From Octopus bimaculoides (lineage: Eukaryota): 64,000 bases of DNA. The translations under genes were made by a program, and so were the position numbers. Positions 2,524 to 2,621 of the stretch are shown here, in pieces. Each line of letters starts with the position of its first letter. Position 1 is the stretch's first letter. The stretch covers positions 50,060,273 through 50,124,272 of the forward strand of contig NC_068993.1 of NCBI RefSeq assembly GCF_001194135.2, given 5' to 3'. The notes below the pieces were generated by a model. That model did no database searches and was not told where the DNA came from. It was given only the letters and a program-made list of their open reading frames with translations.

Positions 2524-2621
2524 CTAACTTCAATTTTCTTTTCTTTTATTTTTTAGGTAAGTACTTAAAAAATCTTTTAAACTGGAATTTTCTGTTTGTC
2601 TTTTCCCAAGAAATGGTAAGT
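2524..2621 (+). promoter_or_regulatory. Candidate recursive splice site plus 59-nt ATG-ending exon / 5-nt microexon
   Basis: CTAAC 2524-2528; polyY 2529-2554; AG 2555-56 directly followed by GTAAGT 2557-62; second polyY 2588-2607, AAG 2608-10, AAATG 2611-15, GTAAGT 2616-21. Confidence 0.45.

What the first reader, a model, noticed from the sequence alone, without database searches (positions are those of the whole stretch)
2524..2621. Textbook recursive-splice (ratchet) site coupled to a start-codon-bearing exon or microexon
Seen: CTAAC (2524-28), a ~26-nt pyrimidine tract, then TAG immediately followed by GTAAGT (2557-62). 59 nt later comes ATG|GTAAGT (2613-15|2616-21), itself preceded by a second pyrimidine tract and AAG (2608-10). 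Established: AG|GT zero-length exons followed by a short cryptic exon with a competing donor are the RS-exon layout of Drosophila and vertebrate giant introns. Inference: three outcomes are possible (zero-length recursive splice, a 59-nt exon ending exactly in ATG, or a 5-nt AAATG microexon), so splice choice could switch a start codon on or off. I know of no description of recursive splicing in cephalopods. No repeat in the window explains the motif.
Basis: partly seen in the sequence, partly recalled or inferred. Interest (0 to 1): 0.75.

Follow-up and report, generated by a model that had tools for sequence, protein, structure and literature searches.

The report
Recursive-splice look-alike inside an AT-rich foldback
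The splice-signal motifs are really there and match the fly and vertebrate recursive-splice layout closely, but they sit in one arm of a local inverted repeat in gene-less, repeat-rich DNA, and nothing available here shows they are ever used.

Summary
Every motif is at the stated coordinate. AGGTAAGT alone is at chance level: 1 seen, 0.4-1.1 expected per strand. With the pyrimidine tract it is rare (0.004-0.017 per strand-window). With CTAAC at -30 and a second GTAAGT 59 nt downstream it is about 1e-6 to 1e-5, a post-hoc figure.

All sequence-level traits of a ratchet point with a cryptic RS-exon are met. None of the traits that make a site real could be tested: position in a long plus-strand intron, junction or lariat reads, and conservation.

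About 11,000 aa of window ORFs gave no protein, Pfam or Rfam hit. Two DNA pattern scans found no related DNA.

The tract, the AG and the first donor lie in the left arm (2529-2581) of a strongly significant inverted repeat, whose right arm is 2681-2739. If transcribed, this is predicted to base-pair the tract.

My estimates:
- Unused look-alike in a foldback repeat: about 0.5.
- Genuine recursive site: about 0.33.
- Ordinary small exon: about 0.07.

The start-codon switch and the 5-nt microexon have no support. The cephalopod origin is unverified. Interest is low to moderate.

The parts
2524..2528 (+). CTAAC, a candidate branch point. The branch A at 2527 lies 30 nt upstream of the junction.
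   Evidence: The distance matches the -30 peak of ratchet-point branch points. The chance of CTAAC at -18 to -40 is about 0.015.
2529..2554 (+). Pyrimidine tract, 23/26 pyrimidines, with T at -5/-6 and no AG inside.
   Evidence: The acceptor ranks 9th of 6,615 AG on both strands.
2555..2562 (+). AG|GTAAGT, a juxtaposed acceptor and donor. It is the only AGGTAAGT in the window.
   Evidence: composite rank 1 of 326.
2557..2615 (+). Putative 59-nt cryptic RS-exon. Its length is not a multiple of 3. It has stops in two frames, and its only ATG is its last three bases.
   Evidence: read directly. The size fits the roughly 50-nt cryptic RS-exons of PMC8605326.
2588..2610 (+). Second pyrimidine tract (18/20) followed by AAG, a weaker acceptor.
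   Evidence: rank 62 of 6,615.
2613..2621 (+). ATG|GTAAGT, the second donor. It is the candidate RS-exon donor.
   Evidence: donor rank 36 of 6,497; the first donor ranks 21.
2529..2581 (.). Left arm of the inverted repeat. It contains the tract, the AG, the first donor and the 10-nt palindrome TAAGTACTTA (2559-2568).
   Evidence: I1, I3; local alignment score 28.5 against a null of mean 9.4, sd 2.0, maximum 17, n=1500..
2681..2739 (.). Right arm of the inverted repeat, an A-rich tract. Where the left arm reads AGGTAAGT, its reverse complement reads ATGTATTT.
   Evidence: Duplex energy is -23.4 kcal/mol, against -9.2 +/- 3.4 for random 59-mers.
2458..2491 (+). Diverged direct-repeat partner (76%) of 2520-2553. 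It includes AAATCTAAT, matching AAATCTAAC.
   Evidence: D1, D4.
2739..2783 (.). (ATT)n microsatellite next to the right arm.
   Evidence: D2, D3.

Best explanation
The site is a look-alike, not a dedicated recursive splice site. A roughly 210-bp AT-rich foldback (inverted repeat 2529-2581 / 2681-2739) lies in repeat-rich DNA with no detectable genes. Its T-rich left arm happens to run into AGGTAAGT, so it spells a consensus acceptor|donor junction. A second GTAAGT lies in the loop.

Shown:
- the motifs;
- the inverted repeat;
- the absence of any detectable coding sequence.

Inferred:
- The pyrimidine tract exists because it is a repeat arm, not because splicing selected it.
- If the plus strand is transcribed, pairing of the two arms would hide the tract and the AG from U2AF.
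- The site would then be silent, or at most an occasional pseudo-exon or decoy.
For: - AGGTAAGT and GTAAGT occur at chance frequency.
- The rarest ingredient, the tract next to AGGTAAGT, is explained by the foldback. Inverted-repeat score is 28.5, against a null maximum of 17 in 1,500 samples. It has the best complementary partner of 24 T-rich tracts.
- The arm similarity runs through and beyond the junction, 43 of 49 aligned bases.
- TTTTC-type tracts recur at about 5 loci in the window.
- In the predicted ensemble the tract has an unpaired probability of 0.08 and the AG 0.04.
- The local block also contains a direct repeat and a microsatellite.
- No exon, domain or RNA family was found anywhere in the 64 kb.
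- In large genomes, motif-only sites are near chance level (PMC2773006).
Against: - The full composite is expected only 1e-6 to 1e-5 times per strand-window, which is about once or less per 2-3 Gb genome.
- Every sequence-level ratchet-point trait is met.
- The plus strand is pyrimidine-rich across the whole window, with T>A in 15 of 16 bins. That is the direction seen on the sense strand of vertebrate introns (PMC2927911).
- The fold of the 231-nt region is not significantly more stable than shuffles (z = -1.9), so masking is only a prediction.
- A foldback origin does not exclude later use as a splice site.
Confidence: 0.5

Rival explanations
1. It is a genuine intronic ratchet point in a long plus-strand intron.
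1. The upstream exon is spliced to the AG at 2556, using the branch A at 2527 and the 2529-2554 tract. The 59-nt cryptic RS-exon is defined by the donor at 2616.
2. The regenerated donor at 2557 then out-competes the 2616 donor.
3. The RS-exon is skipped and nothing is left in the mRNA.
For: - The acceptor|donor junction has TT at -5/-6, a branch point at -30 and no AG in between.
- The cryptic exon is 59 nt, out of frame and has stops in two of three frames, as described for cryptic RS-exons.
- Behind a typical exon end, the donor at 2557 would pair with U1 over more positions than ATG|GTAAGT at 2616 (inference).
- Composite chance is 1e-6 to 1e-5, and the site ranks 1 of 326.
- The 64 kb has no exons, and the plus strand has T>A skew. 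Both fit a giant plus-strand intron.
Against: - There is no evidence of transcription, of a host gene or of conservation.
- The tract is a repeat arm and is predicted to be paired.
- The two donors have identical core hexamers, so the RP donor is not clearly the stronger one.
- C>G skew is opposite to the mammalian sense-strand pattern.
- Motif-only predictive value is low in large genomes.
- No second strong ratchet-like site exists in the window.
Confidence: 0.33
2. It is an ordinary small exon at 2557-2615. This would be a 59-nt cassette, poison or 5'UTR exon, possibly contributing the ATG at its end. The fact that it begins with GTAAGT would be incidental.
For: - It has a strong acceptor (rank 9 of 6,615) and a strong downstream donor (rank 36 of 6,497) at exon-like spacing.
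- The ATG lies in the only open frame and has a purine at -3 (read directly).
Against: - The composition is T-rich and low in complexity, with no coding signal.
- The overlapping ORF 2561-2698 found no protein similar to it.
- An exon starting with a perfect donor hexamer would itself be prone to re-splicing.
- The ATG is a 1-in-60 coincidence and was noticed after the fact.
- There is no evidence of any transcript.
Confidence: 0.07
3. It is a pair of intronic U1-binding sites. The two GTAAGT would recruit U1 snRNP to suppress premature cleavage at the nearby AATAAA hexamers (2419, 2429, 2517, 2660), that is, telescripting, without being spliced.
For: There are two perfect U1-complementary hexamers within 60 nt, among several plus-strand AATAAA hexamers. 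The concept of U1 telescripting comes from the abstract of PMC5499120.
Against: - GTAAGT and AATAAA both occur at composition-expected frequency.
- It does not explain the acceptor half of the motif.
- There is no evidence of transcription.
Confidence: 0.04

Closest known systems
Drosophila intronic ratchet points with cryptic RS-exons (Ubx, kuz, Bx; Duff et al. 2015; Joseph and Lai 2021)
   Same: - (Y)n-AG|GTAAGT junction with TT at -5/-6.
- Branch point about 30 nt upstream.
- Short (~50 nt) out-of-frame cryptic exon closed by a downstream donor.
   Different: - The fly sites are defined by junction, saw-tooth and lariat reads, lie in introns longer than 11 kb and are ultraconserved. None of this is known here.
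- The fly RP donor is usually stronger than the RS-exon donor. Here the two core hexamers are identical.
- This site sits in an inverted-repeat arm.
Vertebrate RS-exons in long genes (Sibley et al. 2015; Blazquez et al. 2018, as summarised in PMC8605326 and PMC5126111)
   Same: YAG|GT junction, exon-definition layout, competition between two donors, and stop codons in the cryptic exon.
   Different: Vertebrate sites were found from brain RNA-seq in very long genes. Only a few fully suppressed intronic sites are confirmed. Motif matches are not enriched over the antisense strand.
Pseudo-exons, or 'zero-length exons', deep in introns (Grellscheid and Smith 2006, as cited in PMC2773006)
   Same: Consensus-quality splice signals deep in non-coding sequence that are not part of the mature mRNA.
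   Different: Those cases lie in known transcripts. Here even transcription is unknown.
Hairpin-forming AT-rich inverted repeats (foldback or MITE-like elements)
   Same: About 210 bp, AT-rich, with roughly 50-nt arms at about 88% identity over aligned bases and a roughly 100-nt loop.
   Different: No target-site duplication is seen and no second copy is in the window. No family membership could be tested.

Membership tests
Intronic ratchet point / zero-nt recursive splice site | Juxtaposed acceptor and donor, (Y)n N Y AG|GTRAGT | tested here: met
   TTTTTTAG|GTAAGT at 2549-2562. It ranks 1 of 326 AGGT.
Intronic ratchet point / zero-nt recursive splice site | TT at -5/-6 and a branch point 21-36 nt upstream (Duff et al.) | tested here: met
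   T at 2551 and 2552. The CTAAC branch A at 2527 lies at -30.
Intronic ratchet point / zero-nt recursive splice site | Lies in a long (>10 kb) intron on the sense strand of an expressed gene | not testable with these tools
   No exon or gene was found in 64 kb. The only hint is weak: plus-strand T>A skew.
Intronic ratchet point / zero-nt recursive splice site | Junction reads from the upstream exon to the site, saw-tooth coverage, and lariats to and from the site | not testable with these tools
   No RNA data are available.
Intronic ratchet point / zero-nt recursive splice site | Strong conservation of the junction compared with its flanks | not testable with these tools
   No related DNA was retrievable. 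Both metagenome pattern scans were empty, and no protein handle led to an orthologous locus.
RS-exon (exon-definition model) | Short cryptic exon (~50 nt) closed by a downstream donor, usually out of frame or carrying stops | tested here: met
   The exon is 59 nt (2557-2615) with its donor at 2616. It has stops in two frames and its length is not a multiple of 3.
RS-exon (exon-definition model) | The regenerated RP donor is stronger than the RS-exon donor (for skipping) | tested here: inconclusive
   Both donors are GTAAGT. The exonic side of the RP donor depends on an unknown upstream exon. The RS-exon donor has a T at -2.
Microexon (5-nt AAATG, 2611-2615) | A functional acceptor and donor flanking a 3-27 nt exon, included in mRNA | not testable with these tools
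   Only the AAG acceptor (rank 62) and the donor are visible. There is no RNA evidence. Read directly, no UGC motif lies upstream of the AAG.
MITE / foldback transposon | Terminal inverted repeats | tested here: met
   Arms are at 2529-2581 and 2681-2739.
MITE / foldback transposon | Target-site duplication and multiple dispersed copies | tested here: not met
   No flanking duplication is seen and no other copy is in the window. Genome-wide copy number could not be tested.

The most novel reading that the evidence does not exclude
It is a working recursive splice site in a cephalopod or other lophotrochozoan, where none has been described. Its pyrimidine tract and AG would be gated by a roughly 50-bp A-U-rich hairpin formed with a tract 160 nt downstream. 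RNA structure, or editing or unwinding of it, would then decide between zero-length recursion, inclusion of the 59-nt ATG-ending exon, and no use at all.
Probability: 0.07. Interest if true: 0.7.

Novelty: not a real feature. Interest (0 to 1): 0.3.

Why it matters
If the site were used, it would extend recursive splicing from insects and vertebrates to a third major animal lineage with very long introns. It would also offer a structure-gated example. That would be a new member of a known mechanism, not a new mechanism.

As it stands, the case shows that a textbook motif composite cannot be called functional from sequence alone. Its rarest ingredient here has a repeat-based origin.

Tried and rejected
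Searches that found nothing:
- An exact look-up of the nearest long ORF in public assemblies was not on record.
- Three protein homology searches covered about 8,100 aa of window ORFs of at least 35 aa, on both strands. They included ORFs beside the site and TE-like or SINE-like ones. All returned zero hits. One attempt was over the length limit.
- Pfam on 176 ORFs gave nothing at E <= 0.05.
- Rfam and tRNA scans gave nothing.
- Two metagenome DNA pattern scans for the site found nothing.
- Self-BLAST found no dispersed copy of the site.

Candidate exons I rejected:
- 62796-62927 (+) is a degenerate GGT/GCT repeat.
- 43.7-44.6 kb (-) has protein-like ORFs, but no protein in the collection resembles them.

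Other points:
- By eye, some fragments look mariner-like or LINE-like. Pfam did not confirm them; the best match was Exo_endo_phos at E = 0.16.
- The two donor-bearing segments are not a tandem duplication of each other (read).
- The cephalopod origin could not be tested with any tool.

Full report
**Observation.**
- CTAAC is at 2524-2528.
- The tract 2529-2554 is 23/26 pyrimidines and has no AG inside.
- TAG (2554-2556) abuts GTAAGT (2557-2562).
- A second tract (2588-2607) is followed by AAG (2608-2610), ATG (2613-2615) and GTAAGT (2616-2621).
- The two donors are 59 nt apart.

**What the window is.** It is 30-35% G+C with 16 runs of N totalling 6,590 bases. It carries many microsatellites and several copies of a SINE-like repeat. 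This is what a draft scaffold of a large, repeat-rich eukaryotic genome looks like. I could not verify that it comes from a cephalopod.

**Is it more than chance?**
- GTAAGT (17 plus, 12 minus) is at the frequency expected from composition. The single AGGTAAGT compares with 0.4-1.1 expected per strand.
- Requiring at least 16/20 pyrimidines upstream lowers the expectation to 0.004-0.017 per strand per 57.4 kb.
- CTAAC at -18 to -40 adds a factor of about 0.015. A second GTAAGT within 120 nt adds 0.02-0.036. The product is 1e-6 to 1e-5.
- On an approximate juxtaposed splice-site matrix, written from memory of published consensus tables, the site ranks first of 326 AGGT on both strands, by 4.7 bits.

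The cluster is therefore unusual for one window. Two cautions apply. The features were picked after seeing them, and looser but equally textbook variants raise the probability by orders of magnitude. In addition, a 2-3 Gb genome would hold roughly 400-1,600 tract+AGGTAAGT sites by chance.

**Comparison with the recursive-splicing family.** Published definitions describe a ratchet point as a tandem acceptor|donor with a cryptic RS-exon of about 50 nt closed by a downstream donor. The junction is ultraconserved, while the exon body is poorly conserved and usually out of frame. The RP donor is generally stronger than the RS-exon donor (PMC8605326). In Drosophila:
- 99.5% of ratchet points have TT at -5/-6;
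- branch points lie at -36 to -21, peaking at -30;
- host introns are 11-133 kb;
- only 6% of introns that long contain a ratchet point (10.1101/006163).

Here TT is at -5/-6 and the CTAAC branch A is at -30. The candidate RS-exon is 59 nt, is not a multiple of 3 and has stops in two frames. Every sequence-level trait is met. Donor competition is undecided, because both core hexamers are GTAAGT.

**Context could not be established.**
- The nearest long ORF is not on record in public assemblies.
- About 8,100 aa of ORFs from both strands found no similar protein.
- 176 ORFs (8,588 aa) gave no Pfam match.
- Rfam and tRNA scans were empty.
- Two pattern scans of metagenome contigs for the site were empty.

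I therefore have no exon, no host gene, no strand of transcription and no orthologous DNA.

The only hint is compositional. After masking tandem repeats, the plus strand has T>A in 15 of 16 4-kb bins (skew -0.045, or -0.036 after also masking A/T runs). It also has C>G (-0.039), and T-runs are about twice as frequent as A-runs. In vertebrates T>A marks the non-template strand along genes, but there it comes with G>C (PMC2927911). The hint for plus-strand transcription is weak and mixed.

The tract, the AG and the first donor lie in the left arm (2529-2581) of an inverted repeat. The right arm is 2681-2739.
- The gapped local alignment of arm 1 to the reverse complement of arm 2 scores 28.5. 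For 1,500 random non-microsatellite positions of the window the mean is 9.4, the sd 2.0 and the maximum 17.
- Among 24 comparably T-rich tracts, this one has the best complementary partner within 300 nt.
- TTTTC-type tracts recur at about five loci. The similarity, however, continues for 30 more bases through the junction. Arm 1 reads TTTAGGTAAGTACTTA where the reverse complement of arm 2 reads TTTATGTATTTACTTA.
- The first donor is also part of a perfect 10-nt palindrome, TAAGTACTTA (2559-2568).
- A diverged direct repeat (2458-2491 against 2520-2553) and an (ATT)n array flank the block.
- As RNA, the two arms give a -23.4 kcal/mol duplex. Random 59-mers give -9.2 +/- 3.4, and the best A-rich control gives -18.1.
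- In the ensemble of the isolated 211-nt RNA, the tract is unpaired with probability 0.08 and the AG with 0.04.
- The whole-region fold is not significantly better than shuffles (z = -1.9).

**Weighing the readings.** The foldback gives a non-splicing origin for the rarest ingredient, a long T-tract directly before AGGTAAGT. It also predicts that the tract would be masked. That lowers the case for a selected ratchet point. Yet the remaining coincidences (AGGTAAGT at the arm, CTAAC at -30, a second perfect donor at RS-exon distance) are themselves rare.

A rough count of chance sites against plausible real sites gives about even odds. This assumes 100-1,000 real sites if the lineage uses the mechanism, which is unknown. 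[quoted passage not shown] In a large genome a motif match by itself is therefore weak evidence.

My estimates are:
- unused look-alike in a foldback: 0.5;
- genuine recursive site: 0.33;
- conventional 59-nt exon: 0.07;
- U1-binding or other role: 0.04;
- the rest unassigned.

**The add-on ideas.** The ATG is the only ATG in the 59 nt. It lies in the one open frame and has a purine at -3. It is nonetheless a coincidence of about 1 in 60 with no transcript behind it. The 5-nt microexon needs an AAG acceptor that ranks only 62nd, and there is no upstream UGC-type enhancer motif. Neither idea has support.

**Novelty.** No paper in the searched library links recursive splicing with cephalopods or octopus beyond one incidental co-mention. 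A validated site would be a first for that lineage, but it would be a new member of a known mechanism. Without RNA or comparative data, the finding is a well-formed candidate and not a discovery.

Noticed in passing
window 2529-2581 and 2681-2739: A significant roughly 50-nt-arm inverted repeat (foldback) with a roughly 100-nt loop. It contains the putative splice junction in its left arm. No target-site duplication is seen and there is no second copy in the window.
   Followed up: yes
whole window, plus strand: A persistent pyrimidine excess on the plus strand. T>A holds in 15 of 16 4-kb bins. C>G is seen overall, and T-runs of at least 8 number 25 against 13 A-runs. This may reflect transcription direction, replication or repeat orientation; the cause is unresolved.
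   Followed up: partly
window ~11.4, 13.4, 25.8, 32.8, 33.0, 39.3 and 45.5 kb (both strands): A SINE-like dispersed repeat family, recognisable from recurring ORF motifs (LQLDALPN..., HPTHASME...). Copies occur in both orientations. A second family (ETDRISTRLTKNKS / FDRPEATVEDTSPRC motifs) is at about 4.3-4.6, 38.4 and 55.8-56.1 kb.
   Followed up: no
window 1891-2016 and 52587-52712 (-): A diverged repeat pair (70% over 127 nt). The left copy ends about 500 nt upstream of the site and does not reach it.
   Followed up: partly
window ~29.5 kb, 17565-17723 (-), ~36-37 kb: By eye, some ORF scraps resemble a mariner transposase (…LGMRCMSAKFVPKLLSPDQK…) and LINE endonuclease or C-terminal zinc-knuckle pieces. 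Pfam did not confirm them; the best match was Exo_endo_phos at E = 0.16.
   Followed up: partly
window 43.7-44.6 kb (-): A cluster of ORFs with protein-like helical sequence (for example …NALLSLLEIIGSDQLIRNTVIDAIEVHSWLMK…). No protein in the collection resembles them and there is no Pfam match. They could be an unannotated or lineage-specific exon cluster, or just chance.
   Followed up: partly
window 2251-2258 (+): CAG|GTGGGT has the third-best juxtaposed acceptor|donor score in the window. It lies 300 nt upstream of the site, in the higher-G+C stretch 2180-2330.
   Followed up: no
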